From the IMG/VR virus record IMGVR_UViG_3300046660_000219, positions 62,001-126,000 of that record: 64,000 nucleotides of DNA; one strand, given 5' to 3'. Below, one piece after another: positions 5,647 through 22,610 of the stretch. The notes under the pieces were generated by a model that saw only the letters and a program-made list of their open reading frames with translations, was not told where the DNA came from and made no database searches. A program made the position numbers and the translations under genes. Each line of letters begins with the position of its first letter. Position 1 is the stretch's first letter.

Positions 5647-6116
5647 TGGTAGCACGTGTAACTAGCACCCTTGGTTTTGACGTCCGTTTGTACTCTGCGT
5701 CCTCGTCCATACGTCGCTCTGTTGTCGAAACCCGCGTCGGCTACAACGTCGCGAACGGCTACAATAAATGCGAAAACGTACTGTCGACAGACTCGCAGTT
5801 GATCACGGTCGATGTGTCCAAGCTACTGTATATCCAAGCAAAACAGCCGTTCACTATCACGGTGACGCGCGGTCCTAAGTTGCAGGAATATGTGTACCTG
5901 ACACGTCCTGACGGTACCTTTTTGACGCGCCTGGACGGAACGTATTTCATACGGCTAATCGAGCCTATCGTTACTGATGTGGAAGTGACCTCGTACACTG
6001 AGACGCATTCGTCGTTGTGCTTGATCACGCCATCCGCCGGCGAAGGGGAGACTATAACGGTAGTAGTTTCCCGCGCCTCCAATGTTGATACCCCTATCGT
6101 CGTGGTGTCAGCCTAA
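5646..6116 (+). CDS. Virion structural protein with inserted LTRPDG module
   Basis: TAATG overlap with upstream stop; beta-rich; contains LTRPDGTFLTRLDGTYFIR. Confidence 0.6.
   Translation: MVARVTSTLGFDVRLYSASSSIRRSVVETRVGYNVANGYNKCENVLSTDSQLITVDVSKLLYIQAKQPFTITVTRGPKLQEYVYLTRPDGTFLTRLDGTYFIRLIEPIVTDVEVTSYTETHSSLCLITPSAGEGETITVVVSRASNVDTPIVVVSA
5898..5954 (+). repeat. LTRPDG double peptide motif, copy A
   Basis: LTRPDGTFLTRLDGTYFIR. Confidence 0.9.
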
Positions 6117-6145
6117 CCCGAGCTTTGCTCCTACTGGAGATGTCA

Positions 6146-6481
6146 ATGTCTTCGAACTGCAAGGTTACCAATAAGCTCGCCACCGCGTTGATCCTTAACA
6201 ACGCCGAAGGTGACACCATCCAACTTCCGCCGAGCCGCGACGCGCATAATGTCCCGCGCTCCTACATCCACTTCCAAGCGCCTAGTATCGCTGTCGCTGA
6301 TATCGAAGGTTACGATTACAGCATTGGACGGTTCGCCGATGATGCTAAAGCGGAACCCGTAGTGGTTGAAGCGCAAGACGAAGTTCTGGAACCGGCCGCT
6401 CCGCCTGCCACGACGCAACCTGTGTCTAATGGTAACAGTGGTGGTCAGCGCCCGAACTCCAACAATCCCCGTAACCCGTAA
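6146..6481 (+). CDS. Hypothetical structural-block protein
   Basis: SD ggaga; biased codons; directly upstream of sheath. Confidence 0.6.
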   Translation: MSSNCKVTNKLATALILNNAEGDTIQLPPSRDAHNVPRSYIHFQAPSIAVADIEGYDYSIGRFADDAKAEPVVVEAQDEVLEPAAPPATTQPVSNGNSGGQRPNSNNPRNP

Positions 6482-6496
6482 GGAAAGTAAGCGACC

Positions 6497-8731
6497 ATGG
6501 CCGATAACCTTGGCGTTACGGTTGAGCGCGACGACGAGAGCGGTTTCATCACTGCTGACGGTGCTACCGTTACGGTGGTGGGCTTCTACTCGACGCGCGG
6601 TTCGACCAAGCCCTACTACACTTCCGACCCTGGCGCGTGGACCGCTGAATACGGCAACCCCGACGCTTCTATTTCTTACGCCGGTTACAGTGTGCGCAAG
6701 CCGCTAGAGCAAGGCGACGGTGTCTGGAATCTGCGCATTACGGATAGCGCTACCTATGGCGGTGCGTTCGTTACCGCTGGTACGACGTCCGTGTCTAAGC
6801 TCCCGTTCCTGGCGGCTGGTTGGCCGTACTCGATTGACGATGTTGATACGGCTATCAATCCGACCCGTCCGCTGCTTATCCAGCTCAAGTTCTCAGCGGC
6901 CCTGATTACGGCCAACTCGTTCACGTGTACCCTTGTTGGTGAGAGCGCTCAGGTGTCTACGACGCCGGTAGTATTCGCCACTGACAGCGATACGACGATG
7001 GGCGCTATCGTTGCTGCCATTCAATCGAGCATGGACGCGACGTTCGGTGCTGGCGGTACGGTTTCGGCCGGCGAAACGACGCTTATTCGTACCATTAACG
7101 TGATCCCTCCGGCCGGTAAGACGATCTCGATCACGGGTGCGGCTGTCACGCTTGGTGCTTCGCAAGCTACCGTTACTCAAGGTAGCCCGTTACTGATCTT
7201 CCAACATGCCAACCCTGGTTCGACTTCGGACGAACTCGGCTACTTTTTGTCCAACCCGGACTTGGGGCAGCGCGAAGTCGTTACCTTGACGTTCCCGTCC
7301 GCGCTTAGCACGGGACACGGTACTCTTGTTACCGTTAATGGTGCGGCTACGTCGTCGATCGTCTACGCGACGTCCAGCGATGCTACTATGCAGGCCATCG
7401 CTGACGCTGTCGCAGCGCTAGCCACGGTCAAATCGGCTACGGTTACCAAGGTAGCGTCTGGTGCAAGCAACGACCGCACCATTACCATTATCTTGAAGAC
7501 GGCTACAGCTACGGCTGCTACTGTTAGCACGACGCAAGCTGGTGGCGCTCCGGTTCCGGTGATCAAGTCCACCAAGCCCGGCGTTGATCCGGATGGTAGC
7601 TTTACGCTGGCGATTTTCGACCGCCGTAACCCGGCTGTCACGGTCGATAGCTGGCGCGTCAATCTCACCGAACGCTTGGACGGTGACGGCGTGCAACAGC
7701 ACATCGAAGAAGTGATCAATAAGGGTGATGCTAAATCGCGCCTGTTGCGGGTGATTTCGCTGGCTCCAAAGGATGGTTCGGTTCGTATTCCGTTCGATCC
7801 GGACACTGGCGTGATCATGACGCAGATTGCGTACCTTTCTGCCGGCAATAACGGTGTCATCCCTTCGGCCGCCAAAATGGCTGACGCTATGTTGGTCTTC
7901 CAAGATCCTTACCGTTATCCGGCTGATCTGATGATCAGTGCTGGTTACACGTCCATTGCCTATCAGCAAGCGTTGAAGAACATCGCTAAGCTGCGTGGTG
8001 ACGGTACGTTCGCCATCCTGGACATTCCGAGCACGCAACAGTCGTTCGACAACCTGATTAACTACCGTTTGTCCACGCTAGCTATCGACGATTCGTCGGC
8101 TGGCGCGTACTACCCCGACGTGGAAATGCAAGATCCGGTTACGCAGCGCAAGCTGTTTGTGCCGCCGTCTGGCCATATCGCGGCGGTGTTTGGTGTTAAC
8201 GACCGCGTGCGTGGCTTCGGTAAGGCTCCGGCCGGTCGTAAGGTTGGTGTGGTCGATACCACGGCGCTGCGTTATGAATATACGCAGGCGCAAGTAACGC
8301 TTCTGGCGGAGAACTACCAGCTTAATGGTATTCTCAAGAAGGGCGTTTCGTGGTGTGTGTGGGGTGATTTCACCCTACAAGTCATGAAGTCTGCGTTACA
8401 GTTTACGGGCATCAGCCGTCTGGTTGGTAAGCTTGAATTCGCCATCGCCGACATGCTTGACTTCGACACGTTCGATCCGTTCAATGACGCGCAAGCGTTC
8501 TCGATGCGTGAGAAGATCAACCGCTTCCTGGCGCCGTACATCAAATCGGAAGACCTTCGCGGTTACACGGTCAATACTGGATCTACCGCCGGCAATACGG
8601 CGGCTCTGGAGGACCAAGGCGCACGCATCGTGGAAATGAAACTCAATCCGACGCGATCGACCCGCAAGATCAAACTGCGATCGATCATTACGGCGGCTGG
8701 GGTTGAAACTACCGTTACGGAAGTCGCCTAG
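6497..8731 (+). CDS. Tail sheath protein
   Basis: 744 aa; C-terminal sheath-like motifs (YYPDV, VPPSGHIAAVF, WGDFTL, ISRL); precedes tube genes. Confidence 0.9.
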   Translation: MADNLGVTVERDDESGFITADGATVTVVGFYSTRGSTKPYYTSDPGAWTAEYGNPDASISYAGYSVRKPLEQGDGVWNLRITDSATYGGAFVTAGTTSVSKLPFLAAGWPYSIDDVDTAINPTRPLLIQLKFSAALITANSFTCTLVGESAQVSTTPVVFATDSDTTMGAIVAAIQSSMDATFGAGGTVSAGETTLIRTINVIPPAGKTISITGAAVTLGASQATVTQGSPLLIFQHANPGSTSDELGYFLSNPDLGQREVVTLTFPSALSTGHGTLVTVNGAATSSIVYATSSDATMQAIADAVAALATVKSATVTKVASGASNDRTITIILKTATATAATVSTTQAGGAPVPVIKSTKPGVDPDGSFTLAIFDRRNPAVTVDSWRVNLTERLDGDGVQQHIEEVINKGDAKSRLLRVISLAPKDGSVRIPFDPDTGVIMTQIAYLSAGNNGVIPSAAKMADAMLVFQDPYRYPADLMISAGYTSIAYQQALKNIAKLRGDGTFAILDIPSTQQSFDNLINYRLSTLAIDDSSAGAYYPDVEMQDPVTQRKLFVPPSGHIAAVFGVNDRVRGFGKAPAGRKVGVVDTTALRYEYTQAQVTLLAENYQLNGILKKGVSWCVWGDFTLQVMKSALQFTGISRLVGKLEFAIADMLDFDTFDPFNDAQAFSMREKINRFLAPYIKSEDLRGYTVNTGSTAGNTAALEDQGARIVEMKLNPTRSTRKIKLRSIITAAGVETTVTEVA

Positions 8732-8740
8732 CACCCTTGA

Positions 8741-8775
8741 GGAGCTGTTACCATTTAGGTGGTAACAGCTCCTTT
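8741..8775 (+). terminator. Rho-independent terminator
   Basis: ggagctgttacca-tttagg-tggtaacagctcc followed by ttt. Confidence 0.8.
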
Positions 8776-8805
8776 CTCCAACCTAGTTAGAAGGAGATCG
8801 TCACC

Positions 8806-9348
8806 ATGGGTGTTAAAGCCACCTTTGACGACGTCGATGCACGCCCTGGAGTTATTCAGGCCAACGCATATCGCTACATGTTCGATCGCATTCCCGGTTC
8901 TCCGGAAATCGACATCAACGCCGTGTCCCTAGACTGTCTGGCCTCGACGTGGCCGGGTCGTTCGGTCGGTAAGATCGATCTGAATTTCGCTGGCGGCCAT
9001 ACTATTTCCTACCCTGGAGATCAGGCCTTCACGCGTACTGCTGCTGCCCGGTTCATCGAGCGCAGCGGATTCGAAACCTTTACGTGGCTGCACAAGTGGC
9101 ATGAGCAGATCAAGGGTACGAAGTCCGGCAATGCCGCGACCTACCGTAAACTTGGTCTGGTCGCTGTTAGTCAGCTCGAAATGTATGACGAGACGGGCGC
9201 GGTTGCTAACTCGTGCCGACTGATCAACACGTGGCCGTCCGAGCTGAGCGAAATCAGCCCTGATTCCGACACGCGCGACTCGGCGGTCATCTGGCAAGTT
9301 ACCTTTAGCTTCGACATCGTCGAATACGATAAGTCGCCTGCCCGATAA
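8806..9348 (+). CDS. Tail tube protein (T4 gp19-like)
   Basis: 180 aa after sheath; NTWPSELSEI and WQVTFSFD pattern typical of tube fold. Confidence 0.8.
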   Translation: MGVKATFDDVDARPGVIQANAYRYMFDRIPGSPEIDINAVSLDCLASTWPGRSVGKIDLNFAGGHTISYPGDQAFTRTAAARFIERSGFETFTWLHKWHEQIKGTKSGNAATYRKLGLVAVSQLEMYDETGAVANSCRLINTWPSELSEISPDSDTRDSAVIWQVTFSFDIVEYDKSPAR

Positions 9349-9371
9349 AGGTAATTTATATATCGGAAATG

Positions 9372-9404
9372 AAAGCCATGCGGCCAGTGGTCGTGTGGCT
9401 TTTT
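9372..9404 (+). terminator. Probable terminator after tube gene
   Basis: aaagccatgcggcc-agt-ggtcgtgtggcttt followed by tt (14 bp with G-U pairs). Confidence 0.65.
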
Positions 9405-9433
9405 CCGTATTTCGGCGCGTTCTGGAGACACCT

Positions 9434-10219
9434 ATGTTCAAGCCGACTTTCGACGACGCTGATCAGTTTGATCCGGTGCTGGCGACTAGCTACGCGGTAG
9501 CTTTTCCCGATTTCCCTCTGTTGGGCTATCTAGCTGCTGACGCCGACCTACCCGGTTGGACGGTTGATCGCGTACGCGCTGAACTGTTTGGCCGTTCGCG
9601 AGAGTGGCCGGGGCGTTGTGTTTCGTCACATACGCTAACCATGACCATGCTATACGACGACCGTAGTCGTGCTTTCCGTTCTCTTTACAGTATGCTGCAA
9701 TCGGTCGTTGATAATAGTACTGGTAACCGCAGTGGCCAGCTATTCACGATCATTGTAGAGCAGTACGACAGCATGGGTTTGCTGGTACAACAGCGCTTGT
9801 TCGATGGGTGTTGGGTTGCAGATTTACGCGGTTATCAGGTATCGGCTAGTTCACGCGACACGGCGGTCATGATCCCGGTGGAATTTGGCTATACGCAGCA
9901 GTTCGTAACCTTTGGCGGAAAAGCTATATCCGCGCCACTGATTCCGACCAACGCCACTACTCTTTTGGGTTCTGATCCGCGTGACTTGCTGGAGACCTTC
10001 TCGCAATCGCTCCTCAACGTGCCTGACTCAATCGTCGATATTCTGCGTACAGGCTCTCAAGCTGTCGCTTATGGTAAGGCTATCCTAGGCGCTGCTAATC
10101 AGCTTAGCAGCGTAGCCAAAAACGTCGTGCAGCAAGCCAAGACAAATCCGATAGCCGCTGCAAAAAGTGCGTCGTCGTTGATCAAGCAAACCAAGTCTAC
10201 ACTCAAGTCCTTCTTCTAA
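9434..10219 (+). CDS. Tail tube-like paralog
   Basis: N-terminus KPTFDD resembles KATFDD of 8806 protein; EQYD, FDGCWV, VEFGY pattern. Confidence 0.65.
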   Translation: MFKPTFDDADQFDPVLATSYAVAFPDFPLLGYLAADADLPGWTVDRVRAELFGRSREWPGRCVSSHTLTMTMLYDDRSRAFRSLYSMLQSVVDNSTGNRSGQLFTIIVEQYDSMGLLVQQRLFDGCWVADLRGYQVSASSRDTAVMIPVEFGYTQQFVTFGGKAISAPLIPTNATTLLGSDPRDLLETFSQSLLNVPDSIVDILRTGSQAVAYGKAILGAANQLSSVAKNVVQQAKTNPIAAAKSASSLIKQTKSTLKSFF

Positions 10220-10237
10220 GCAGAAAGGGTATGGGAT

Positions 10238-10792
10238 ATGGCTATCTCGACCTATTTCAATCCCCTTGATCTCTACGCCTTGGCCGATCCTATGCCGTCC
10301 TGGCGGTGGAAGGCGAGGATCATTCCTAACGCATCGGAGGCTGCACAAAAAGTAGACTGGACTCGATTGATCTTCGAAGAAGTCAATCTGCCAAACGGTG
10401 ACAACATCCCCGCCAAGTCTACTTTCGTCAACGGCCACAACGTCTACTTCCCGGATTTTAGCGACGTGCCCTCTGTGAGTGTCACCATTTACGAGGACGA
10501 AAATGGTAGCGCTATTCGAGAATTACAGACGTGGCGCTCACTGGTCAAACGTCGCGTTGGTGCGTACAGTGTTTATGGTCTACCGTTCGAATATAAGCAA
10601 ACTATGCTTATCGATCTCTACGGCTTCGCGGACAACAAGAACCCTGTGCTGTCCAGTCAGGTTGTTGACTTGTGGCCTACCGATCCTGGCACGTGGCGGC
10701 TAGGTTACGACGCGTCTAATCGCCTGTTTCACCAGATTACCATGCAGTGCGATAGCATTATAACCGCTAATCGGGCTGGTGGTCCCGGCTAA
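10238..10792 (+). CDS. Tail tube-like/tube initiator (gp54-like)
   Basis: EEVNLP, SVTIYED, DLWPT pattern of gp19/gp54 fold. Confidence 0.65.
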   Translation: MAISTYFNPLDLYALADPMPSWRWKARIIPNASEAAQKVDWTRLIFEEVNLPNGDNIPAKSTFVNGHNVYFPDFSDVPSVSVTIYEDENGSAIRELQTWRSLVKRRVGAYSVYGLPFEYKQTMLIDLYGFADNKNPVLSSQVVDLWPTDPGTWRLGYDASNRLFHQITMQCDSIITANRAGGPG

Positions 10793-10838
10793 TTTATATG
10801 TAGCGCTGAAGGCGCTACTACTGTTTAAGGGACAAACT

Positions 10839-11942: not shown

Positions 11943-12063
11943 GATACCGGTGACGGGCGTGACCATGGACATCAACAGTGTGCCCATGGTCTACATCATC
12001 GATGCGTACCAACAGGAACAGCGTAGGCGTACCCAGTCTGAGCTGGAGTCTGCTGTTCGGTAG
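11932..12063 (+). CDS. Small protein overlapping end of chaperone gene
   Basis: 43 codons filling the gap before 12083. Confidence 0.4.
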   Translation: MVREIPVTGVTMDINSVPMVYIIDAYQQEQRRRTQSELESAVR

Positions 12064-12082
12064 TGTTTCGTGAGGTGAAGTA

Positions 12083-14326
12083 ATGGCCCTGGTAGCTTCA
12101 GGCACGTACGGTCCGCCTAAGCCGCAATATAGATACGCTACGAAGATTTCGGGCTTCCATTCGGAACGGCTTATGGGCGGCCGCTCTCCCGGTAGCGCTA
12201 TGGATCGTCTGGCGCAACGTACCGTTACTAAACCTCTGCCTAGTAAAGATCCACGCGCCGCTAACCCGGTAGATCCTAGGGTGATGTCTGCGATTTCGCA
12301 GATGGCTAAGAATGGTACACGAGCCAACGATAGCGCCAAGGAGGCGGTGACGCAAGATCGTCTGCAATTCCTGACCAGTGAGCGTCGCGCCGATCGCGAA
12401 CGTCTCACTAACACGATGACTAATCGTAAGGTTCTGGAACTCCTTGATCGGATCAACGACAGTATCAAGACCAGTGCTGGTCGCAACAGTGGCGGTCTAC
12501 TGGACTCCGCGCTGGATTTGATCGGTATTGGTGGTCGTGGTCGAGGCAAATATCGCAATCGGGCCGGGCGCTTCATTAAACGTCCCGGTACCTTTTTTGG
12601 TCGTGTTGGCGCTAAGCTAGGTTTACGCGGCGCTGCCACAGAAGCTGAAGCCGTGGCCGGTACTGTCGCTCGCACTGGACGGGCTGGTGGCCTGTTAGGC
12701 AAGCTCTTCGGCGGCGTAGCCGGGCGTGGTGCACTCAAAGTTCTCGGCTTTGGTGGTCGCCTCGCTGGTAAGCTAGCATTACCGGTCGCGGCTGGTTTGG
12801 CTCTAGCTGACGGCGTGAATGGCGTGCGCCACTCGGATGAACTGTTAGGTCGCAAATCTACCAATTTGGACAAGATCGGCGTAGGCGTAACTGAAGCCGT
12901 CAACGGCGCGCTGTTTGGCTTGCCTGATCTGATCAGTAAAAAGGTATTCGGTGTCGGGTTCTCGCGCGGCATCAACGCCTTGCTTTCTGACATTGGCGGC
13001 AACACTCGCAAAGCTATTGCTTTCGGTGCAGCAGGAATGAGTAAACTCTTCAGTTCTGCTTCTCAATCCATCGTGCAATGGTTCAGCAACGTACAGGGCT
13101 CAGTTGACGCCATAATAGACGCGGTAAACCGGCGTGACTGGGGCAAGGTTCCTGGCCTTATCGGTAAGGTTCTGAAATACACCACACCCCTCGGAATAGC
13201 GATCACGGCTGGTAAAGCGGCGGTCAACGAGGTGGAAAAGGTCGCACCGGGAACCAAGGAAGCGGTGCGTACGGTTGCTACCAATGTCGCTACCGCAGCC
13301 GGTAACGCCGCATCGAATGTCGCTGGCTGGTTTGGCCTTGGCAGCACCTCGCGCAAGTACGAGAGCGGACGGGGTGGTGCTGGTACCGTTTCTTCCGGTC
13401 GTGGTGATCCGGGTGGTGCTAGTTACGGCACGTATCAGTTGGCCAGCAAGACCGGAACACTGGCGTCATTCCTTAAGTCTAGTGGCTATGACAAACAGTT
13501 CATGGGTTTAAAAGCTGGCACTAAAGAGTTCAATGATAAATGGAAAGAGATTGCCCGCACCGATCCTAAGTTCGGTGAAGCGCAGCATGACTTCATCAAG
13601 CGCACGCACTACGACCCGGCCGCCCGTTATGCTCAGTCGTTGGGTTTCGACATCAACGATAAAGGTATAGCGGACGCCATTTGGAGTGCTTCGGTACAGC
13701 ACGGCGGCGTCAAAACGATCCTGCGTAAAGCGGCTGCGTCCCCTGGCTGGAACAGCCTCGACAACAAAGGTAAAATCAAGCGTCTATACGAAGTCCGCAC
13801 TGAGTACGCCCGCAACATCTTGGTTAAGAACGGTGCGTCATCAGAGCAAATCTCTAGTGTGCAGAAACGCTATACTAGAGAAGTGAACGACGCTCTTGCC
13901 TTGTCGTCGGACCCTGGCTCTGTGCAACTAGCTGGCGGCAAGCCAGTAGGCCAAGCAATCGCGGTCTCGCAAACCATGGCGCAAGCGAAAGCTACGCCGG
14001 GATCGGTAGCTACTACGCAAGCAACGATTACGGCTGATGCGAACAAGGTTAGTGCGCTAGGTACACAACGTGGTTCGCGTACTGTTTCTACCGAAGCGTT
14101 AATGCCGCCTATGCCGCCACCGAAGAAACCGGAGCCCCCGCCTCCGCCGGTGATCGTGCAACAGGTTGCGCCTGACAAAGGTAGAAACAACGCTGCTAAG
14201 GTGGCTACAAATGCCGCTGCTCCGCAGCCTTCTACGAGCGGGCAATTGCCACCTTTAGCGTCTATCCCGACCGTACCTAGTCTTGAACTACTGGCCATTG
14301 CGTCTCTAGCCTACCATCCTGCGTAA
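12083..14326 (+). CDS. Tape-measure-like tail protein with lysozyme-like domain
   Basis: Gly/Ala-rich helical region then SRKYESG...GDPGGASYGTYQL peptidoglycan hydrolase motif. Confidence 0.7.
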   Translation: MALVASGTYGPPKPQYRYATKISGFHSERLMGGRSPGSAMDRLAQRTVTKPLPSKDPRAANPVDPRVMSAISQMAKNGTRANDSAKEAVTQDRLQFLTSERRADRERLTNTMTNRKVLELLDRINDSIKTSAGRNSGGLLDSALDLIGIGGRGRGKYRNRAGRFIKRPGTFFGRVGAKLGLRGAATEAEAVAGTVARTGRAGGLLGKLFGGVAGRGALKVLGFGGRLAGKLALPVAAGLALADGVNGVRHSDELLGRKSTNLDKIGVGVTEAVNGALFGLPDLISKKVFGVGFSRGINALLSDIGGNTRKAIAFGAAGMSKLFSSASQSIVQWFSNVQGSVDAIIDAVNRRDWGKVPGLIGKVLKYTTPLGIAITAGKAAVNEVEKVAPGTKEAVRTVATNVATAAGNAASNVAGWFGLGSTSRKYESGRGGAGTVSSGRGDPGGASYGTYQLASKTGTLASFLKSSGYDKQFMGLKAGTKEFNDKWKEIARTDPKFGEAQHDFIKRTHYDPAARYAQSLGFDINDKGIADAIWSASVQHGGVKTILRKAAASPGWNSLDNKGKIKRLYEVRTEYARNILVKNGASSEQISSVQKRYTREVNDALALSSDPGSVQLAGGKPVGQAIAVSQTMAQAKATPGSVATTQATITADANKVSALGTQRGSRTVSTEALMPPMPPPKKPEPPPPPVIVQQVAPDKGRNNAAKVATNAAAPQPSTSGQLPPLASIPTVPSLELLAIASLAYHPA

Positions 14327-14337
14327 AAGGTAATCCA

Positions 14338-15093
14338 ATGGTTGATACACCGCAGTCGCCTAGCATTTATCAGTACATGCTCTCCGTGCCTAACAAGGTT
14401 TCGGTGATTGGCAACTTGCCCCAAGAGTGGGCTCTTGGTGTGACGGCCAATTGGGAAGGAAATAGTACCGGCACGACGATAGGCGAGATCGCGCAATCGC
14501 GATTTGGTTCTGTAGGCGCTGCTGTAACAGCGGCGTCCGGTACGTCTTCGGTGGGGTCTGACCTGTTGGCTAATCGCCAATGGGCCGGTACCTCACCGAT
14601 TACCTTTAATCTGTTGGCTGAATTCAACGCTGTAGAAGACGCGGCCAAGGATGTGATGTCGCCTATCTTGCGCCTGATGTCCCTGTGCATGCCGACGCAA
14701 TTGGTAGCGCTAGAGGCTGGCAAGTTCAGTCTCGGCAACATCTACGGCGCGCCATACTTCGACACGGCGGCTAGCGGACAGCTCGGCGGGCGTTCGCAGA
14801 TAGAATTGCACTTGGGTTCGCTATTTGTGTTCGAAGACGTGGTGGTGGAAAACGTCACGCCTACCTATACGACGCGAAACACAGAGACCGGTTTACCTAT
14901 CCACGCGCAAGTGGAAATTCAAGTTGGTACGCGCCACCTGTTCACTTTTGAAGACCTTCTAGCATCCATCGTAAATCCCGCGATCATCGATGCTGATCCG
15001 TACCTTTCTTCCGCAAAATCTGCTGGCTCTGGTTCAAGGGCGGGGTTCGGTATCTCAGGGGCGAAAGAGACCAAGCCTGTCAGTAACGGTTAG
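14338..15093 (+). CDS. Baseplate/tube-cap-like protein (gp48-like)
   Basis: Synteny; tube-like beta pattern (FEDVVVENVTPTY). Confidence 0.5.
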   Translation: MVDTPQSPSIYQYMLSVPNKVSVIGNLPQEWALGVTANWEGNSTGTTIGEIAQSRFGSVGAAVTAASGTSSVGSDLLANRQWAGTSPITFNLLAEFNAVEDAAKDVMSPILRLMSLCMPTQLVALEAGKFSLGNIYGAPYFDTAASGQLGGRSQIELHLGSLFVFEDVVVENVTPTYTTRNTETGLPIHAQVEIQVGTRHLFTFEDLLASIVNPAIIDADPYLSSAKSAGSGSRAGFGISGAKETKPVSNG

Positions 15094-15110
15094 TGTTTAA
15101 GGAGTATGGC

Positions 15111-15482
15111 ATGGCTGTTCTAACGCAACAGGACATTGCGTCCACGACGACTACGCAAGCTAACGCCTGCCGGGTCGCGGTCTTCCCAGAAATTGTATAT
15201 GAAGACGGTGAGCTGGTGCTGGATTTCATGGACAGTACTACTATTAGACTGATCCACGATTTACCAGTACTAACCGCCATTGAGTGGCGCAAGGGTCTAT
15301 CGCTACCGGCCGTCTCCCTCGACTTCTACAACACCATTTCGTGGGCATGGATTCTGCTGCTATACAACGGTTTCACGCATCCGTCCAACATCCCAGCCGG
15401 GGCTACCGTAAACCTGCCTGACGTGACGTCGCTGCGTAAGCGTGCCCGTCGAGATAAGAACGGTAGTGTCGTGACGATCTAG
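15111..15482 (+). CDS. Baseplate wedge protein (gp53/LysM-like)
   Basis: YNTISWAWILLLYNG...IPAGATVNLP. Confidence 0.7.
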   Translation: MAVLTQQDIASTTTTQANACRVAVFPEIVYEDGELVLDFMDSTTIRLIHDLPVLTAIEWRKGLSLPAVSLDFYNTISWAWILLLYNGFTHPSNIPAGATVNLPDVTSLRKRARRDKNGSVVTI

Positions 15483-15492
15483 GAGGCCGTCT

Positions 15493-16662
15493 ATGGCCAA
15501 CATTGAAGGCAAGGCTCACGTCTACATCAGCTTTGATGGTCGCGACCCTAACGTCACGTCGCCGCAAGGGGTTGAATACCTCTGGGCCATCGAAAATAGT
15601 ATGTTGATCGCCCCGGTCTTGATGCTATCGCTCTACGACGATGGTGTGATCACTAACCCGTCACCCGGTGATGGTTCGCTGATTGAAGTGCAGCTCGGTA
15701 AGCAAGCAGACCGACTCAACAGTTATCGTTTCCGCATGATTGGCGCGCCGTACGCTGCGCTCGCCGCTAACGGTAAAACAGTAATCCGCTACAACGCGGT
15801 TTTCGACTCCCCTCGCTTGTTTCACGAGACGGCTAACTTCGCACTCAAGGCTTCTAGTAGTGACGTCGTCAGCGCCGTTGCTAGCGAGTTAGGCCTGACT
15901 GCGGACGTTGACTCGTCGATTAGCGATAAAATGATATGGCATAGCGGCATTGGTCGCTGGAGCGCTTTCCTTGAGCGTGTAGCTTCGCGTGGCTGGTTTG
16001 GGGATGACAGCGCCGCTACCAATGCCGCTATTGGCCTAGACGGTGTGCTGCGCTACTACAGTCTTGCCCGTCTAGCTAAGGCTCCTGTAGCACATACCTT
16101 TTATCATATGACGCCGCTGCCCGAAGCCGGCTCTACGGAAGCGGAAAACGCGCATCTGGTCTACGCTCTGGATCGCGACGATAGTGTTGCGTTGACCACG
16201 GCGCAAACTGGATACACCGCCACTACCCGTTACTTCGATCGCAGCGGCGCTATCGTGACACACGACAGCGTCAACGTTACTCGCCAAACCAATCAACTGA
16301 ACATGAGTGCGGAACTGCGCGACGCTATCGATATTGGTACGCAGCGCATCCGTCCGTCAGCGTCGCCGAACACTCATGAGAACTGGGATCGTGCGTTGTA
16401 TCAAAACACGCGCTATCGCTCCACATACAACGCTGCAATCAACGTGCTACTGCTAGATACCACGCAGGATCTTACCCTTTATACACCTTGTGCGCTGCGC
16501 TCGACGTTCTTCGCTACCGGTGCGCAAGACGACGCGTTACGCGCCGTACGTGGCCTAGTCAAAGCGCGCTCGGTTGGTATCTGGAACATGAACTACATGG
16601 AAAAGGTATCGATTGGGGTGCAAGGCCTCGATGCTAACGATCCGACCAGTGCACAGATGTAA
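15493..16662 (+). CDS. Baseplate hub protein (gp27-like)
   Basis: 389 aa, between gp53-like and spike genes. Confidence 0.6.
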   Translation: MANIEGKAHVYISFDGRDPNVTSPQGVEYLWAIENSMLIAPVLMLSLYDDGVITNPSPGDGSLIEVQLGKQADRLNSYRFRMIGAPYAALAANGKTVIRYNAVFDSPRLFHETANFALKASSSDVVSAVASELGLTADVDSSISDKMIWHSGIGRWSAFLERVASRGWFGDDSAATNAAIGLDGVLRYYSLARLAKAPVAHTFYHMTPLPEAGSTEAENAHLVYALDRDDSVALTTAQTGYTATTRYFDRSGAIVTHDSVNVTRQTNQLNMSAELRDAIDIGTQRIRPSASPNTHENWDRALYQNTRYRSTYNAAINVLLLDTTQDLTLYTPCALRSTFFATGAQDDALRAVRGLVKARSVGIWNMNYMEKVSIGVQGLDANDPTSAQM

Positions 16663-16674
16663 GGATAACCACCC

Positions 16675-17307
16675 ATGCAGGACTTCGAAGGGCAACGTTC
16701 TGCGCTGCGTACACCACCGATCAACTTCGTTGAAGGCGTAGTTGTTCAGGGTGATGAAGACTTGAGCCCGATCTACGCTAAGGTGCGTTTGCCTGGTTAC
16801 CACACCAAGGTAGACGACGCTGATTTGCCTGTATACCGTTTGTTGTTACCCGTCTTCGGAACAGGTCACAATGTAACAAATGGCTCGCAAATCTTCGCCA
16901 AATTAGCGCCCGGCACTCGTGTTGAGGTGCTGTTGCGAGATGAGACCGGTTACGTTGGCTCGATCTTTGGTGTTTACCCCAACGAGTCTAACGCCGCGCG
17001 CCCTGATGGGCTTGTGCACGGTTGGCGTGATAGTATTGGTAACGCGGTAGAGTTCTACGCTGACGGGCGCACAGTGTTTCAGGACAAAGCTGGAGTGAAG
17101 GTCGAGACGGACGGCGCTGGCAAGATTACTATTAACGCTACAGCGTTCGAGTTGAACACTCAGACCACGACGATCAACACCGTAAACTATGTGCTCAACT
17201 CGGAGACCATGGTGTGCGATGACACTAGCGCACCAGAAGCTCCTGAATTGACTCCGCGTGAAGTCGAACCTCCGCCGGAAACTTCCGATCTGAAGGATAA
17301 ATGGTAG
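16675..17307 (+). CDS. Baseplate central spike (gp5/gpV-like)
   Basis: OB-fold start (GVVVQGDED, AKVRLPG) and beta-helix-like repeats. Confidence 0.7.
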   Translation: MQDFEGQRSALRTPPINFVEGVVVQGDEDLSPIYAKVRLPGYHTKVDDADLPVYRLLLPVFGTGHNVTNGSQIFAKLAPGTRVEVLLRDETGYVGSIFGVYPNESNAARPDGLVHGWRDSIGNAVEFYADGRTVFQDKAGVKVETDGAGKITINATAFELNTQTTTINTVNYVLNSETMVCDDTSAPEAPELTPREVEPPPETSDLKDKW

Positions 17308-17760
17308 ATGGCCGACATTCCCTTCGTCATCGCGCCGCGCTCTGACAGCATGCCGTCCGATGCGCAACTAGGTCGCGTGTACACGCTTACCTATGTTGAT
17401 GTTAATGCGTCGTTGTCGTCTACCAATCCCGCCAAGTTGCTGTTAACGGATGTTGACGCAATCGAAGAGCAAATGCTCAACGTCGTACTGACGCCACTAA
17501 GTTCTGATGAGTTTGAGCCTCTATATGGTACGCAAGTGCCGTTGCTGCTGTTTGATCCGGTAACCAACACCACGGCGCGCGCTCTTCGTTCTACTATTAT
17601 CAATGGCCTCAAGCGCTGGATGGGCAATCGAATCAGTGACCTGTCTGTGTTTGTCGTGGCTAATGACGATCTACAAAGCTACACCGCGACTTTCACCTAC
17701 TTCGTTCCAGGTCTTAGTCGTTCACGTGTTGGCTTCCGTGCTCTGCTTATTAAAAGGTAA
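17308..17760 (+). CDS. Baseplate wedge gp25-like
   Basis: NVVLTPLSSDEFEPLYGTQVPLLLFDP. Confidence 0.8.
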   Translation: MADIPFVIAPRSDSMPSDAQLGRVYTLTYVDVNASLSSTNPAKLLLTDVDAIEEQMLNVVLTPLSSDEFEPLYGTQVPLLLFDPVTNTTARALRSTIINGLKRWMGNRISDLSVFVVANDDLQSYTATFTYFVPGLSRSRVGFRALLIKR

Positions 17761-17766
17761 CAGTCC

Positions 17767-19377
17767 ATGACCACTGCTTCTGAGAAGCTTAGCACGTTGG
17801 TTGATGCGTTGATCGCCACAGCCACCAACGCGGGCGTCACCTTTACCGACACGCAACGTACTGCGCTGTATGACTCGGCGGCGTCCTGGTTGGACGGTCA
17901 AGATACTGTTTCTATCCAGTTGGCCGCCAACAAGCCGGAGTTTCAGCAACTCCTCATGCAAATGCAGTACGCACTGGAGACCAGCGATTCTTGGCGCGAC
18001 GCCAATACTGCGTCCACCGGACGTACCTTTTTGCGTTTTATGGCCGCTTCCATCAAGTGGGCTGGGTTTGCAGCGGAGCGTACGGCGCAAGAGCGCTTCC
18101 CGTACACCGCTCGTATGCCTAGCGCCATCCTGGCAAGCACTATGTCGCTTGGCGTGCGCATCACGCGCCGTGTTCCGGCTAACGTCACTGGCACGATCAT
18201 CCGCAACGGTACGGGCTTCCTACAGATCCCAAAATACACCGCCTTCGTGATCAATGATCAGCGGTTCTTCAATCGCGACATTATCATTTTTCCTGATGGT
18301 GATGCATCAGCGGTTTCTATTACTCTTTATCAAGGTACGATCTTCAAGGACAACTACACGGCTTCCGGCGCTACGTTCTCGCGTTATGAGCTGGGCTCTG
18401 GTGACTGGTCACTGTCTGAGGATGATGTAGCATTGACGGTTGACGGCGTTGAGTGGAAGCGCACTACAAACGGTATGTACACTGTCGCACCAACAGACCG
18501 TACCTTCGCTGAGCGTACGCTGCCTAATGGTAACATTGAGACGCAGACGGGTTCCGGTACGTATGGTGTGCTTCCCAGCACTGGTGCGGTTCTGGAATTC
18601 ACCTATGTCTCTACGCTGGGAGCGCAAGCCTCCAACAACGCTACCGATTTGCCAATCAATTGCGCGGACATTGGCGGTGTCACCGGTGTGACCACTAGTG
18701 TGATCACGGGCGGTATCGATCCGGAGACGCCTACCTTTTACAAGAACAACGGCCCGGCTATCGCCGCTCGCCGCGAGCGTGCAGTGCGGCGCTCTGACTA
18801 TGAGGCTACGGCCTTGGAGTACAAGGGCGGCGTAAAGATACTAGATGCGCGGTTCCTTGGTCAGCAAGAAGTCGATCCTACCCGCAAGGCGCTCACCAAT
18901 ATTGTACAGGTAGCGCTACTGACGCCAAACTCGCTAACAGGTCCACCGGTTAGCGCGTCGCAGTGGGCCAACTTCCAACGCTACATCGTGCAAAATGGTA
19001 TCGATCGCGTCACTTTGGTGCGGGTTGATCCTACAGCCGTAGACATCAGCTTCGACCTAGACGTCGGCGTGATCCCTGAGAGCAATCTAGAGACGATCGA
19101 GAGCGCCTTGATAACTCTTTACCGTTCTTTTTACGGCCCTCGCTATGGCGCTCTAGGTCGCGCGTTCTACAGTCAAGACTTGATGTCGTTGATCCGTGAC
19201 AAAGACTTCTTTGACCAGACCATTGCTGCCCAAATCAACTACGTCAAACCCATTGGTGCAACACCTGACGCCGTGGAAATCGATCGTCTTGAATGGCTGC
19301 GTCTGCAAAGCCTCAACCTGAATGTCTTCTACACTAACCGCGACTACTCCAGCCGCGAAACCGGGCTGTCTGGGTAG
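17767..19377 (+). CDS. Baseplate wedge gp6/J-like
   Basis: RRERAVRRSDYE motif, size and synteny. Confidence 0.8.
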   Translation: MTTASEKLSTLVDALIATATNAGVTFTDTQRTALYDSAASWLDGQDTVSIQLAANKPEFQQLLMQMQYALETSDSWRDANTASTGRTFLRFMAASIKWAGFAAERTAQERFPYTARMPSAILASTMSLGVRITRRVPANVTGTIIRNGTGFLQIPKYTAFVINDQRFFNRDIIIFPDGDASAVSITLYQGTIFKDNYTASGATFSRYELGSGDWSLSEDDVALTVDGVEWKRTTNGMYTVAPTDRTFAERTLPNGNIETQTGSGTYGVLPSTGAVLEFTYVSTLGAQASNNATDLPINCADIGGVTGVTTSVITGGIDPETPTFYKNNGPAIAARRERAVRRSDYEATALEYKGGVKILDARFLGQQEVDPTRKALTNIVQVALLTPNSLTGPPVSASQWANFQRYIVQNGIDRVTLVRVDPTAVDISFDLDVGVIPESNLETIESALITLYRSFYGPRYGALGRAFYSQDLMSLIRDKDFFDQTIAAQINYVKPIGATPDAVEIDRLEWLRLQSLNLNVFYTNRDYSSRETGLSG

Positions 19378-19395
19378 CAAGAAAGGTAACGCCAC

Positions 19396-20535
19396 ATGTT
19401 TGACGTGGTTTCAACGCTCAATGAGCGTTTGGCGGAATCTGATTTTTGGCTACACGCAGCGCAAGTGTTCGAGGATACTCTTAACCGGCAGGTGGCCGAT
19501 CCGTTGGCTGAAGCGGCTCGCGCCAACCTGTCTCAGCGCTACCTGCGCGGCGACATAGTTGATCCGCGCACCTTCCCGTTGCTACAACCTGTCGATCCGA
19601 CTGAAGGTAAAACTATAGATCAGTTGATCGCCGAGCGTGTGCGAGAGGCTACCGTTTATGTGGTGTTCTCTCTACCCGCCGGCCACGCGGATCTTACGCC
19701 AACTACAAATGCTATCCTGTACCTGACCATCGACGGGATCATGTATTGGACGCCGATCGATCGCTACACATCGCGCCCTCTGCTGATTCAAGAAGCACGC
19801 TATCAAGGTCTTGATTACTTCTCTGATACTATTTCTACGGCTGATTACGGACGGTTGGTTGACACCATCGGCCAATACATGGCTGAGTCAGGTAGCAACA
19901 AAGCGTTCAGCAAATATCTGGGATTCCTAAAAGATATTCGTCTGCTGGTAGATCAGTTGTGGACGCCGGAAGACGACAACGAGTTCTTCACAGAATTGCG
20001 ATCACTAGACTACAGCATGGATACCATTCTAACCGGTGGTACGTGGTATCCAACATCGCACGTGGACTTGCTGTACGACGTGCTGCGCGACACGAACCTC
20101 AACGATTTGAAGAGCCTGTTCTTCCTGCTAGCGCCGATCAACTTGGTGCTGCACCGTCTTGTTCCTACTATTTTTGCCGACATCCAGATAGCCTTCATTG
20201 GCGGTAGTATGCTCACGATCTTTGATCGGGGCGATTTGGATATTGATACCATTATCAGCGAAGGGGAGTCCTCATTCGTGTACCTTACGCGCCCTGACGG
20301 TACATTCTTGACCAGACCTGACGGTACCTTCTTGATAAGGCTTGTTGGTACTCCGCCTGGAGAAGACGAAGGTGACATTTTCCTTACTCGTCCGGACGGC
20401 TACCTGCTGACGCGTCCTGATGGTACGTATCTCATTCGTGACGTGGAAGGCACTACCACGGAAACGCTGTTGACGCGTCCCGATGGTGCTTTCCTGCTTC
20501 TGCCTAACGGTAGCTACATCATCCGAGATGAATAG
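19396..20535 (+). CDS. Baseplate wedge gp7/I-like with C-terminal LTRPDG repeats
   Basis: Follows gp6-like gene; WYPTSHVDL; three double motifs at C-terminus. Confidence 0.6.
   Translation: MFDVVSTLNERLAESDFWLHAAQVFEDTLNRQVADPLAEAARANLSQRYLRGDIVDPRTFPLLQPVDPTEGKTIDQLIAERVREATVYVVFSLPAGHADLTPTTNAILYLTIDGIMYWTPIDRYTSRPLLIQEARYQGLDYFSDTISTADYGRLVDTIGQYMAESGSNKAFSKYLGFLKDIRLLVDQLWTPEDDNEFFTELRSLDYSMDTILTGGTWYPTSHVDLLYDVLRDTNLNDLKSLFFLLAPINLVLHRLVPTIFADIQIAFIGGSMLTIFDRGDLDIDTIISEGESSFVYLTRPDGTFLTRPDGTFLIRLVGTPPGEDEGDIFLTRPDGYLLTRPDGTYLIRDVEGTTTETLLTRPDGAFLLLPNGSYIIRDE
20284..20532 (+). repeat. LTRPDG double peptide motif, copies B-D
   Basis: LTRPDGTFLTRPDGTFLIR; LTRPDGYLLTRPDGTYLIR; LTRPDGAFLLLPNGSYIIR separated by short acidic or Thr-rich linkers. 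Confidence 0.9.
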
Positions 20536-20579
20536 CGATCGCTTATTTTTTAATCAACCTGTTTGTCTAGGAGGCTACC

Positions 20580-21254
20580 TTGGCTGATCCTTCCATTCCT
20601 ACCGTTTTTGATCTAAGCGCTGAAGTTGGCCAGACGCAGCTCGCCATCATTGAGCTTCAGATCACCGGCAAACTCGCTTACGGTGAAACCCTAACCGCCA
20701 ATGTCGGTGCGTGGTCTAACACCCCTGTGACCATGTCGTATCAATGGTACCGCAACGCCGTCGCCATCTCCGGTGCAACGCGTTCGACTCACCTTGTCCG
20801 CCACACCGATGTCAATACGACCATCTCGTGCATTGCGACCGTGGTTAATGCCACGCAAACGCAGTCGGCCACGTCAAACCTGCTCACCACGTCTATTGGC
20901 AGCGCGCAGGCTCCCGCCAATACGGTCCAACCTGTGCTAACCGGTACGGCGGTCTCTGGTAATACTCTTTCTGTCACTGATGGTACGTGGCTCTACAATC
21001 CCACGAACTACTATTACCGTTGGTATCGCAATAACGTGTTGATCGCTGGCGCGTCGGCTAACACCTATGTCGTTACTGACTCAGAAGTGGCTACGCTAAT
21101 CACCTGTATAGTTATGGCGAAGAACGCTGTCGGCTATACGGAAATCACTAGTAACGCTGTTGGCCCAGTGGAAGAAGCCGGGACCTTCTTGACGCGACCG
21201 GATGGTGTGTTCCTGACGCGTCTCGACGGCACGTTCTTGTTGCGCGCGGCATAA
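20580..21254 (+). CDS. Tandem Ig-like domain virion protein with C-terminal LTRPDG module
   Basis: Two repeats of G.TL...G.W...Y.WYRN...I.GA...T..V. Confidence 0.75.
   Translation: MADPSIPTVFDLSAEVGQTQLAIIELQITGKLAYGETLTANVGAWSNTPVTMSYQWYRNAVAISGATRSTHLVRHTDVNTTISCIATVVNATQTQSATSNLLTTSIGSAQAPANTVQPVLTGTAVSGNTLSVTDGTWLYNPTNYYYRWYRNNVLIAGASANTYVVTDSEVATLITCIVMAKNAVGYTEITSNAVGPVEEAGTFLTRPDGVFLTRLDGTFLLRAA
21189..21251 (+). repeat. LTRPDG double peptide motif, copy E
   Basis: LTRPDGVFLTRLDGTFLLRAA. Confidence 0.9.
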
Positions 21255-21280
21255 CTACAAAGTCGTAAGGAAATAGTAAC

Positions 21281-22516: not shown

Positions 22517-22537
22517 ACCAAACTACTATTTATACAT

Positions 22538-22588
22538 CAGTGATCGTGTCCGCTAATTTACTGTGTGACCAAACGGGCACGATCACTG
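22538..22588 (+). promoter_or_regulatory. 15-bp hairpin with CTAATTTA motif in loop
   Basis: cagtgatcgtgtccg / cgggcacgatcactg; loop starts ctaatttac. Confidence 0.65.
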
Positions 22589-22610
22589 TAGAAACAAATA
22601 GTACCGTAGG

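What the first reader, a model, noticed from the sequence alone, without database searches (positions are those of the whole stretch)
5898..21251. LTRPDG peptide module shared by three unrelated virion proteins
A double motif L-T-R-P/L-D-G-x-F/Y/L-L repeated twice and ending in (I/L)R occurs five times: once inserted mid-protein in a neck/head-region gene (5898-5954), three times at the C-terminus of the gp7-like baseplate protein (20284-20532) and once at the C-terminus of the Ig-like protein (21189-21251). DNA copies differ at wobble positions, so selection acts on the peptide. Inference: a portable beta-hairpin docking tag that attaches accessory fibres or enzymes (Ig protein, SGNH esterases) at several virion positions, a plug-and-socket decoration system.
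Basis: partly seen in the sequence, partly recalled or inferred. Interest (0 to 1): 0.72.

Follow-up and report, generated by a model that had tools for sequence, protein, structure and literature searches.

The report
Portable beta-hairpin tag on phage proteins
A 19-24 residue peptide module (LTRPDGxFLTRPDGxFLIR) really is shared by three otherwise unrelated tail and neck proteins of a 206-kb phage and is kept by strong selection. It belongs to an undescribed family of small add-on modules on phage neck and baseplate proteins, most likely a protein-protein attachment element, though that function is unproven.

Summary
The window lies in a 205,908-bp phage record with terminal repeats. Across all six frames of that genome there are exactly five double "LTRPDG" modules:
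- one inside a 156-aa protein encoded between the capsid and sheath genes;
- three in tandem at the C-end of the wedge protein that follows the gp25-like and gp6-like genes;
- one at the C-end of a two-domain Ig-like protein.

Synonymous sites between the copies are saturated, so only the peptide is conserved.

What the searches add:
- The nearest relative of the wedge protein (67% identity) ends just before the modules. Its contig lacks the adjacent Ig-like and SGNH-esterase genes, so these three features form one 2.4-kb, window-specific cassette.
- Related "acidic" modules (LTDxDGxxLTDxDG) occur on head-completion, SU10-adaptor-like, Pam3-plug-like and other virion proteins of unrelated phages.
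- No Pfam family, solved structure or paper covers the module.

AlphaFold2 gives only a low-confidence strand-turn-strand-turn-strand unit, and the complex prediction gave no verdict.

Best reading (about 0.45): a portable three-stranded beta-meander that mediates protein-protein attachment at exposed neck and baseplate sites. Rivals are a surface-glycan-binding repeat and an inter-subunit clasp.

The parts
5646..6116 (+). 156-aa protein encoded between the major head protein (3652-4731) and the tail sheath (6497-8731). It is the presumed neck or head-tail joining region protein and carries one internal module.
   Evidence: ORF; the ATG start and 156-aa product are on record. No Pfam, PHROG, PDB or Atlas assignment. 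Its position relative to phrog_2522 (major head) and phrog_23 (sheath) comes.
5898..5954 (+). Module copy 1 (LTRPDGTFLTRLDGTYFIR), at residues 85-103 of the 156-aa protein
   Evidence: HMM 39.9 bits
17308..19377 (+). Context genes: gp25-like (17308-17760) and gp6/J-like wedge subunit (17767-19377), directly upstream of the module-bearing wedge protein
   Evidence: PF04965 GPW_gp25, E 3.9e-5 and below the curated cut-off; phrog_219 baseplate wedge subunit, E 5e-41
19396..20535 (+). 379-aa wedge protein in the P2 gpI / T4 gp7 gene position: a core of about 288 aa plus a 91-aa C-terminal tail with three modules
   Evidence: phrog_14098 tail protein, E 2e-7. Homologues P0004 (67% identity) and P0005 (48%) are 288 aa and stop before the tail.
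20284..20340 (+). Module copy 2 (LTRPDGTFLTRPDGTFLIR)
   Evidence: HMM 41.3 bits
20383..20439 (+). Module copy 3 (LTRPDGYLLTRPDGTYLIR)
   Evidence: HMM 37.6 bits
20470..20526 (+). Module copy 4 (LTRPDGAFLLLPNGSYIIR; its second half is degenerate)
   Evidence: HMM 38.9 bits
20580..21254 (+). 224-aa protein with two Ig-like domains and a C-terminal module. Apart from about 20 N-terminal residues, the module is its only non-Ig segment.
   Evidence: phrog_26223, phrog_12736 and phrog_4069 (Hoc-like head decoration); weak Pfam Ig_2
21189..21251 (+). Module copy 5 (LTRPDGVFLTRLDGTFLLRAA, then the stop)
   Evidence: HMM 36.2 bits
21281..22516 (+). 411-aa protein: an N-terminal part of about 230 aa of unknown fold plus a C-terminal SGNH/GDSL hydrolase domain. 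It carries no module and is a candidate partner only by adjacency.
   Evidence: PF13472 Lipase_GDSL_2, E 7e-14, residues 237-396
20254..22610 (+). Window-specific cassette (module tail, Ig-like gene and SGNH gene) that is absent from the syntenic relative L004
   Evidence: L004 matches window 14338-20253 gene for gene (47-74% aa identity) and then continues at 22632

Best explanation
The LTRPDG unit is a self-contained mini-module of about 24 residues. It consists of three short beta-strands joined by two xxDG turns: (phi-phi-L-T)-(R-P-D-G)-(x-phi-L-T)-(R-P-D-G)-(x-phi-L-phi-R).

It is the basic, genome-specific variant of a wider, so far undescribed family of 'double DG-turn' modules. Phages append these modules, in 1 to 7 copies, to exposed termini or loops of neck and baseplate proteins.

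In this phage it most likely works as a protein-protein attachment element. The three copies at the periphery of each wedge and the copy on the neck-region protein would provide landing sites. The C-terminal copy on the Ig-like protein would be that protein's anchor.

Shown:
- the module's presence, boundaries, copy number and portability;
- purifying selection on the peptide;
- gain of the module tail together with the Ig-like and SGNH genes.

Inferred:
- the fold;
- that the module binds protein rather than glycan;
- who binds whom. Attachment could be by module-to-module sheet pairing or by a common, co-evolving socket such as the N-terminal half of the SGNH protein.
For: 1. Discreteness and selection: five copies on three proteins that are otherwise unrelated, with saturated synonymous sites.
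2. Add-on nature: the closest wedge homologues end before the tail. The wedge-protein C-terminus is a hot spot for appended domains in 33 relatives.
3. Cassette: the module tail, the Ig-like protein with a module, and the SGNH gene are jointly absent from the syntenic relative L004.
4. Recurrence on assembly proteins of other phages:
   - at the C-end of Phage_HCP / head closure Hc1 proteins directly after the core domain (L014, L015, L016, L018, L022, L025);
   - inside an SU10-adaptor-like protein (L024);
   - after a Pam3_gp18 baseplate-plug domain (P0040);
   - in tandem arrays in P0016, P0022 and P0038.
   Pam3 gp18 is a buried monomer between hub and wedge (PMC9942802), and the head-completion ring lies far from the tail tip. 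These positions fit protein contacts better than host binding.
5. By my own reading of the alignment, hydrophobic residues sit at consecutive strand positions (FL, YL, FLI). Both faces of a three-stranded sheet would then be apolar, which implies burial against another protein surface (reasoned from A3).
6. All ten half-repeats in this genome share the R-P/L signature, while other phages use D-x. This fits co-evolution with one partner or with each other.
7. In the Ig-like protein the module is the only obvious non-Ig segment, so it is the natural anchor.
Against: - No interaction was demonstrated: the complex prediction gave no verdict.
- Both AF2 models are low-confidence (pLDDT 41 and 52), so even the fold is provisional.
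- Tandem arrays of variable copy number with flexible linkers (1 to 7 copies) are also typical of ligand-binding repeats.
- Three of the other phage genomes checked (93-100% complete) hold the module on a single protein. An obligatory pairing between modules on different proteins therefore cannot be the general mechanism.
- The cassette argument rests on one relative.
- 'Neck' and 'wedge' placements rest on gene order and weak PHROG hits.
Confidence: 0.45

Rival explanations
1. The module is a small carbohydrate- or cell-surface-binding hairpin repeat, a lectin-like adhesin. It would be displayed multivalently at the baseplate rim, at the neck and on an Ig-like protein to increase reversible adsorption. 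It would work alongside the Ig domains and the SGNH esterase rather than anchoring them.
For: - Tandem arrays of 1 to 7 copies separated by Pro-rich linkers (P0016, P0022, P0038, wedge tail) resemble the avidity-type repeats of cell-wall-binding domains.
- The module is rich in aromatic residues and DG turns. Its weak sequence matches are to beta-propeller and beta-trefoil folds that are often sugar-binding (PQQ/Scone, Symfoil, Fascin, SGL).
- It sits genomically next to an Ig-like protein and a glycan-type esterase.
- A genome-specific charge (basic here, acidic elsewhere) could reflect host-specific ligands.
Against: - In several phages the module follows the head-completion core without a linker, or sits on a Pam3-plug-like protein that is buried in the solved baseplate. 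These are poor positions for reaching a host surface.
- The Ig-like protein would then lack any recognisable virion anchor.
- There is no match to any curated carbohydrate- or cell-wall-binding family.
Confidence: 0.27
2. The module is an oligomerisation or inter-subunit clasp, in the manner of a foldon or a strand-exchange staple. It would tie neighbouring copies of the same ring or wedge protein together, or trimerise the Ig-like protein. The three tandem copies on the monomeric wedge protein would form an intramolecular pseudo-trimer.
For: - Other phages carry the module on just one ring-forming protein per genome, which suits self-association.
- The wedge protein has exactly three copies, as does P0038, where by my own reading of the sequence they follow a heptad-like stretch.
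- The DG-to-DG spacing of 8 residues is the same as in the T4 fibritin foldon hairpin, read from NC_000866.
- Both sheet faces would be apolar.
Against: - The module HMM scores the real foldon at -1.9 bits, and PDB profile searches do not retrieve foldon-tagged chains.
- Copy numbers of 2, 4 and 6-7 occur.
- AF2 does not pack the three wedge modules together (pTM 0.30), although at low confidence.
- A pure clasp does not explain why the same variant sits on three different proteins.
Confidence: 0.2
3. The module has no specific function. It would be a neutral, recently spread repeat, a low-complexity spacer, or an artefact of DNA repeats.
For: Its short length, the absence of curated family hits and the low-confidence structure predictions.
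Against: - Synonymous sites are saturated while 10 to 16 of 19 residues stay identical between copies.
- There is no DNA-level repeat.
- The pattern has a zero background rate in 683 kb of related DNA.
- Modules recur at equivalent positions in unrelated phages.
Confidence: 0.03

Closest known systems
Conserved docking and adaptor elements of branched phage receptor-binding complexes (from my own knowledge, not tested here): T4 gp10-like attachment domains, N-terminal anchor domains of tailspikes in G7C/CBA120-type phages, and the adenovirus fibre tail peptide on the penton base
   Same: A short, transferable element that lets different accessory proteins be mounted on a structural platform. 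It is found at baseplate positions and is swapped independently of the catalytic or binding domains.
   Different: Those elements are larger folded domains or N-terminal peptides of known structure. The module here is a roughly 24-aa double-turn unit, usually C-terminal or internal, also present on neck proteins, and with no sequence or structural match to them.
N-terminal beta-hairpins that link the beads of the neck fibre of Anabaena myophage A-1(L) (gp81 on gp82C; PMC10966104)
   Same: Beta-hairpin-mediated head-to-tail docking of accessory proteins at a phage neck.
   Different: In A-1(L) the hairpins belong to trimeric bead proteins and were modelled into a 6-angstrom map. No sequence relation to the module was tested or seen, and here nothing is known about the partner.
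T4 fibritin foldon (C-terminal 27-30 residues of gp wac)
   Same: A very small C-terminal beta-hairpin element on a neck-associated accessory protein, with two xDG turns exactly 8 residues apart.
   Different: There is no detectable sequence homology (-1.9 bits). The foldon has one hairpin plus an extended arm and always occurs as a single copy. The module occurs in tandem, internally, and on monomeric or hexameric carriers.
Blades of PQQ/PD40-type beta-propellers and designed symmetric propellers or trefoils (Scone, Symfoil)
   Same: A strand-DG turn-strand periodicity with apolar strands. These are the best, and only weakly significant, PDB sequence matches (E 1e-5 for 7awy).
   Different: Propeller blades are four-stranded units of about 40 residues that close into rings of 6 to 8. 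The wedge tail has three units of about 30 residues and does not fold into a propeller in AF2.

Membership tests
Undescribed 'double DG-turn' module family defined here (alignment A3) | A roughly 24-residue unit phi-x-phi-L-T-x-x-D-G-x-phi-L-x-x-x-D-G-x-phi-L-phi, with the two DG turns 8 residues apart | tested here: met
   All five window copies align without gaps to modules of P0016, P0022, P0038 and P0040 and score 36-42 bits with the profile.
Undescribed 'double DG-turn' module family defined here (alignment A3) | Occurs as a terminal or inserted add-on on phage virion proteins, and is absent from close homologues of the carrier | tested here: met
   The wedge homologues P0004 and P0005 lack it. 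The HCP homologues in cultured phages match only the core, residues 12-98. The carriers are Phage_HCP, SU10_adaptor and Pam3_gp18.
T4 fibritin foldon | Sequence homology to the wac C-terminal trimerisation domain | tested here: not met
   The module HMM scores -1.9 bits against the T4 wac C-terminus. No foldon-tagged chain was found in the PDB searches.
T4 fibritin foldon | Forms a trimer of hairpins | not testable with these tools
The homotrimer was not run.
WW domain | Match to the WW profile or to solved WW domains, with two Trp residues 20-23 apart and a three-stranded meander | tested here: not met
   No PF00397 hit even at E of 10 or less, and no PDB hit for the W...W-containing small protein of L026. 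The likeness is topological only and recalled from memory.
SH2 domain (Pfam PF00017) | A full domain of about 77-100 residues, including the FLVRES-type strand in context | tested here: not met
   P0001 scores 26 bits against a cut-off of 21, but only profile positions 14-32 of 77 are matched, by 'DGTYLIRD'. This is a short-motif coincidence.
Beta-propeller (PQQ/PD40/SGL) or beta-trefoil (fascin) repeats | Repeat units of about 40 residues with four strands that close into a propeller or trefoil | tested here: not met
   Only partial, weak matches. The units are 29-33 residues with three strands, and the AF2 model shows separate units (pTM 0.30).
Curated cell-wall or carbohydrate-binding repeats (CW_binding_1, LysM, SH3b and others) | A profile match in Pfam | tested here: not met
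   No such family appears in any Pfam scan of module regions, even at E of 10 or less. Binding itself was not testable.
P2 gpI / T4 gp7-position wedge protein (carrier 19396-20535) | Encoded directly after the gp25-like and gp6/J-like genes and before the fibre genes | tested here: met
   The gene order is 17308-17760 (GPW_gp25, weak), 17767-19377 (phrog_219), 19396-20535, then fibre-like genes at 22611 and 23321.
P2 gpI / T4 gp7-position wedge protein (carrier 19396-20535) | Sequence or structural similarity to a solved gp7-type wedge subunit | tested here: inconclusive
   No PDB hit with the protein or with profile A2. The AF2 model is too poor for a fold search. Only phrog_14098 'tail protein' matches, at E 2e-7.

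The most novel reading that the evidence does not exclude
The double DG-turn unit is a new class of minimal (about 24-aa) self-recognising assembly module, a virion 'Velcro'. Its turn residues (R-P here, D-x elsewhere) would form a phage-specific code. Any protein given the tag could then be mounted at every structural site that displays the same tag: the neck ring, and three sites per baseplate wedge. On this reading the 2.4-kb cassette (wedge tail, tagged Ig-like protein and esterase) shows how a phage acquires a whole decoration set in one step.
Probability: 0.2. Interest if true: 0.75.

Novelty: new variant of a known kind. Interest (0 to 1): 0.55.

Why it matters
If the module is an attachment element, it would be among the smallest portable assembly tags known in viruses.
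- It would explain how accessory proteins (Ig-like adhesins, depolymerising esterases) are bolted onto conserved neck and baseplate scaffolds without changing the scaffold fold.
- It would give annotators a simple sequence signature for virion-exposed sites.
- It would offer a compact natural tag for displaying cargo on phage particles.

Even if it proves to be a glycan-binding repeat, it is an uncatalogued family that recurs on structural proteins of many uncultured phages.

Tried and rejected
**Predictions that gave nothing usable**
- Complex prediction of the wedge tail (residues 285-379) with the Ig-like protein (100-224): no verdict, score 0.00. This is evidence neither for nor against binding.
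- AF2 of the full wedge protein with a 6-row alignment: pLDDT 41, unusable.
- AF2 of the three-module tail with a 7-row alignment of natural three-module segments: pLDDT 51.6. Only the secondary-structure pattern was used, and no fold search was run on it.

**Searches for the module or its carriers**
- The word-indexed search of 5.8 billion proteins with the tail region found nothing significant. P0010 and P0011 are unrelated TRPDG repeats.
- The neck-region protein has no homologue other than itself, no PDB hit, only sub-threshold Atlas leads, and no relation to Phage_HCP outside the module.
- Nothing was found in cultured-phage records with the region's DNA, with the module tail as protein (tblastn), or with the P0022 N-domain as protein.
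- IMG/VR scans found no relatives of the gp6-like or capsid proteins and no R-type motif.
- A genome-contig scan for the R-type motif gave 98 pattern hits, but none is a true module.
- Motif strings are absent from the searchable literature.

**Family likenesses checked and rejected as membership**
- Foldon, WW, SH2, fascin/trefoil and propeller.

**Other checks**
- Most of the 32 phmmer hits with E below 1e-3 are unrelated DG-turn or low-complexity repeats, for example a KRAB zinc-finger protein.
- GC composition shows no sign that the cassette is recently foreign.
- L038 carries a possible single C-terminal module on a distant wedge homologue, but with 9-residue spacing and only 4.9 bits. 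It was not counted.
Full report
**Setting**

The window is bases 62,001-126,000 of a 205,908-bp IMG/VR virus record with direct terminal repeats, rated 100% complete, with GC 53.8%. No cultured phage resembles the region at the DNA level.

The finding lies in a contractile-tail structural module:

| Coordinates | Assignment |
|---|---|
| 3652-4731 | major head protein (phrog_2522) |
| between 4731 and 6497 | three small unassigned ORFs |
| 6497-8731 | tail sheath |
| 8806-9348, 9395-10219 | two tube-like genes |
| 12083-14326 | 747-aa protein with a VgrG3-like lysozyme domain |
| 17308-17760 | gp25-like |
| 17767-19377 | gp6/J-like wedge subunit (phrog_219, E 5e-41) |
| 19396-20535 | 379-aa 'tail protein' in the P2 gpI / T4 gp7 gene position |
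| 20580-21254 | two-domain Ig-like protein (Hoc-like PHROG hits) |
| 21281-22516 | 411-aa protein with a C-terminal SGNH/GDSL hydrolase domain |
| 22611-23306, 23321-24142 | two paralogous tail-collar-fibre-like genes |

**The observation**

- A six-frame scan of the window and of the whole genome finds exactly five double modules on three proteins and none elsewhere.
- A profile HMM built from 20 modules scores the five copies at 36-42 bits, with no further hit of 8 bits or more in the genome.
- The same relaxed pattern gives zero matches in 683 kb of related metagenomic loci.
- The carriers share nothing outside the module.
- At the DNA level, 47 of 138 same-residue codon positions across the ten copy pairs use the same codon. 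Independent draws from the genome's codon usage would give 49.7.

The copies are therefore as diverged as the peptide allows. This rules out a recent DNA duplication or a DNA-level signal and shows purifying selection on the peptide. An alternative contribution, selection against recombinogenic DNA repeats, cannot be excluded, but it also presupposes that the peptide is needed.

**Add-on nature and the cassette**

The closest homologues of the wedge protein are P0004 (67% identity) and P0005 (48%). Both are 288 aa and stop where the module tail begins.

The 6.9-kb contig carrying P0004 (L004) is syntenic with window 14338-20253 across seven genes at 47-74% amino-acid identity. Its next gene then matches window 22632 onward, the first tail-collar-fibre-like gene. 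Compared with this relative, the window phage has one extra 2.4-kb block, 20254-22610, made up of:
- the 91-residue module tail;
- the Ig-like gene that ends in a module;
- the SGNH gene.

Base composition does not mark the block as recent.

Among 33 more distant wedge homologues from metagenomes, lengths range from about 200 to 925 residues because different domains are appended to the C-terminus. That end is evidently an exposed, evolvable site. None of the 56 related loci has a clear module. One (L038) has a doubtful single unit with 9-residue spacing.

**A wider family**

An exhaustive phmmer search of 1.84 billion representatives with the 83-residue tail returned 32 hits with E below 1e-3. 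Most are unrelated DG-turn repeats. Four carry the same 24-residue unit at their C-termini:
- P0016, with 4 copies;
- P0022, with 6-7 copies, a homologue of P0016;
- P0038, with 3 copies;
- P0040, with 2 copies after a Pam3_gp18 baseplate-plug domain, ending ...YLTRIDGTLLIRPDGTYFVRA.

P0040's contig shares only the module with the window genome.

A degenerate DNA pattern for the acidic variant LTDxDGxxLTDxDG found 21 IMG/VR contigs. In these the unit sits:
- at the extreme C-terminus of Phage_HCP / head closure Hc1 proteins in six contigs;
- inside an SU10-adaptor-like protein;
- in roughly 550-aa virion proteins;
- at the N-terminus of a 1,193-aa YadA-head fibre;
- in a 66-aa ORF next to a portal gene.

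HCP homologues in cultured phages match only the core. The module therefore turns up repeatedly as an extra on different neck and baseplate scaffolds.

Three of the phages with the acidic unit are 93-100% complete, and each carries it on one protein only. The basic R-type motif was found nowhere else in IMG/VR and in no true module among 98 bacterial-genome pattern hits. Sharing one variant across three proteins is therefore special to this genome.

**What is known**

No Pfam family covers the unit. The hits are short-motif coincidences: SH2 over positions 14-32 only, and weak fascin, SGL and Cache matches.
- PDB searches with the tail, with the module profile and with carriers return only weak matches to PQQ-type propeller blades and designed symmetric beta proteins.
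- Motif strings occur in no relevant paper.
- I recalled the T4 fibritin foldon as a look-alike and tested it with the real T4 sequence. The two DG turns have the same 8-residue spacing, but the module HMM scores it at -1.9 bits. This is an analogy, not membership.
- A WW-like reading (a three-stranded meander, with a PxG-aromatic cap in acidic variants) likewise has no profile support.

**Structure**

- AF2 on the full wedge protein failed (pLDDT 41).
- AF2 on the tail, with an alignment of natural three-module segments, reached only pLDDT 51.6. It gave the same pattern for each unit: strand, turn, strand, turn, strand, with disordered linkers and no packing between units.

I reasoned from the alignment, assuming an antiparallel meander with xxDG loops. 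One face would then carry phi3, L12, phi19 and phi21, and the other L4, phi11 and L20. Both faces are apolar, so an isolated unit should need a partner surface. This is inference, not a result.

**Mechanism**

I weigh three readings.

1. *Protein-protein attachment (0.45).* It best fits:
   - the carriers (ring and wedge scaffolds, including positions far from the host surface or buried, as for the Pam3 plug; PMC9942802);
   - the Ig-like protein's lack of any other anchor;
   - the co-acquired cassette;
   - the genome-wide uniformity of the turn residues.

   Beta-hairpin docking of neck-fibre beads in phage A-1(L) is a precedent for the principle (PMC10966104). Whether attachment is module to module or to a common socket is open. 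The SGNH N-terminal half is a candidate socket: three tandem units could serve a three-fold partner. The single test I could run gave no verdict.
2. *Multivalent glycan or surface-binding repeat (0.27).* It fits the variable tandem arrays, the aromatic content and the neighbourhood of Ig and esterase functions. It fits the neck and plug positions poorly.
3. *Self-association clasp or oligomerisation element (0.20).* It fits the one-carrier-per-genome phages and the triple copy. It does not explain three different carriers here.

A non-functional repeat is effectively excluded.

**Verdict**

The carriers are labelled 'neck' and 'gp7-like' by position only.

I rate it a new variant of a known kind (portable attachment or decoration elements of phage particles). 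Interest is moderate to fairly high (0.55), because a simple wet-lab or deeper-modelling test could establish a very small, programmable virion docking tag.

Noticed in passing
window 20254-22610 compared with L004:5535-6873: The module tail, the Ig-like gene and the SGNH gene together form one block that is absent from an otherwise gene-for-gene syntenic relative (7 genes, 47-74% aa identity). It looks like a ready-made decoration cassette inserted between the wedge core and the fibre genes.
   Followed up: yes
L039, L044, L047, L052, L058, L062, L079 (wedge-protein homologues): Many distant homologues of the wedge protein carry a different recurrent C-terminal add-on, ending in ...NPxGW(Y/F)E..PG.F.PYW. 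The C-terminus of this wedge family appears to be a general hot spot for appended domains.
   Followed up: partly
L026:5092-5524 (and L020): A 66-aa ORF that is little more than one acidic module (…PPLGWQFLTDDDGVYLTDDDGNYLIGEWNG) overlaps the end of a 92-aa ORF in another frame, right after a portal gene. It may be a stand-alone mini-protein, or the +1-shifted C-terminus of the upstream gene.
   Followed up: no
window 12083-14326 and 28785-29729: There are two lysozyme-type genes. One is a 747-aa tail-module protein with a T6SS VgrG3-like C-terminal domain (E 3e-52), probably a virion-borne wall hydrolase. The other is a GH46-like plus PG_binding_1 endolysin.
   Followed up: no
window 8806-9348 / 9395-10219, and 22611-23306 / 23321-24142: Two pairs of adjacent paralogues: two tail-tube-like genes (phrog_45) and two tail-collar-fibre-like genes. 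The relative L004 shows one fibre-like gene at this point before its contig ends.
   Followed up: partly
window 6125-6481: The 118-aa ORF between the module-bearing neck-region gene and the sheath gene ends in a Pro/Asn-rich, probably disordered tail (…EPAAPPATTQPVSNGNSGGQRPNSNNPRNP). No family was assigned.
   Followed up: no
P0001 / window 20383-20439: Pfam SH2 scores above its curated cut-off (26 bits against 21) on the module tail, purely through the DGTYLIRD ~ FLVRES-strand likeness. This is a caution for automated annotation of this module.
   Followed up: yes
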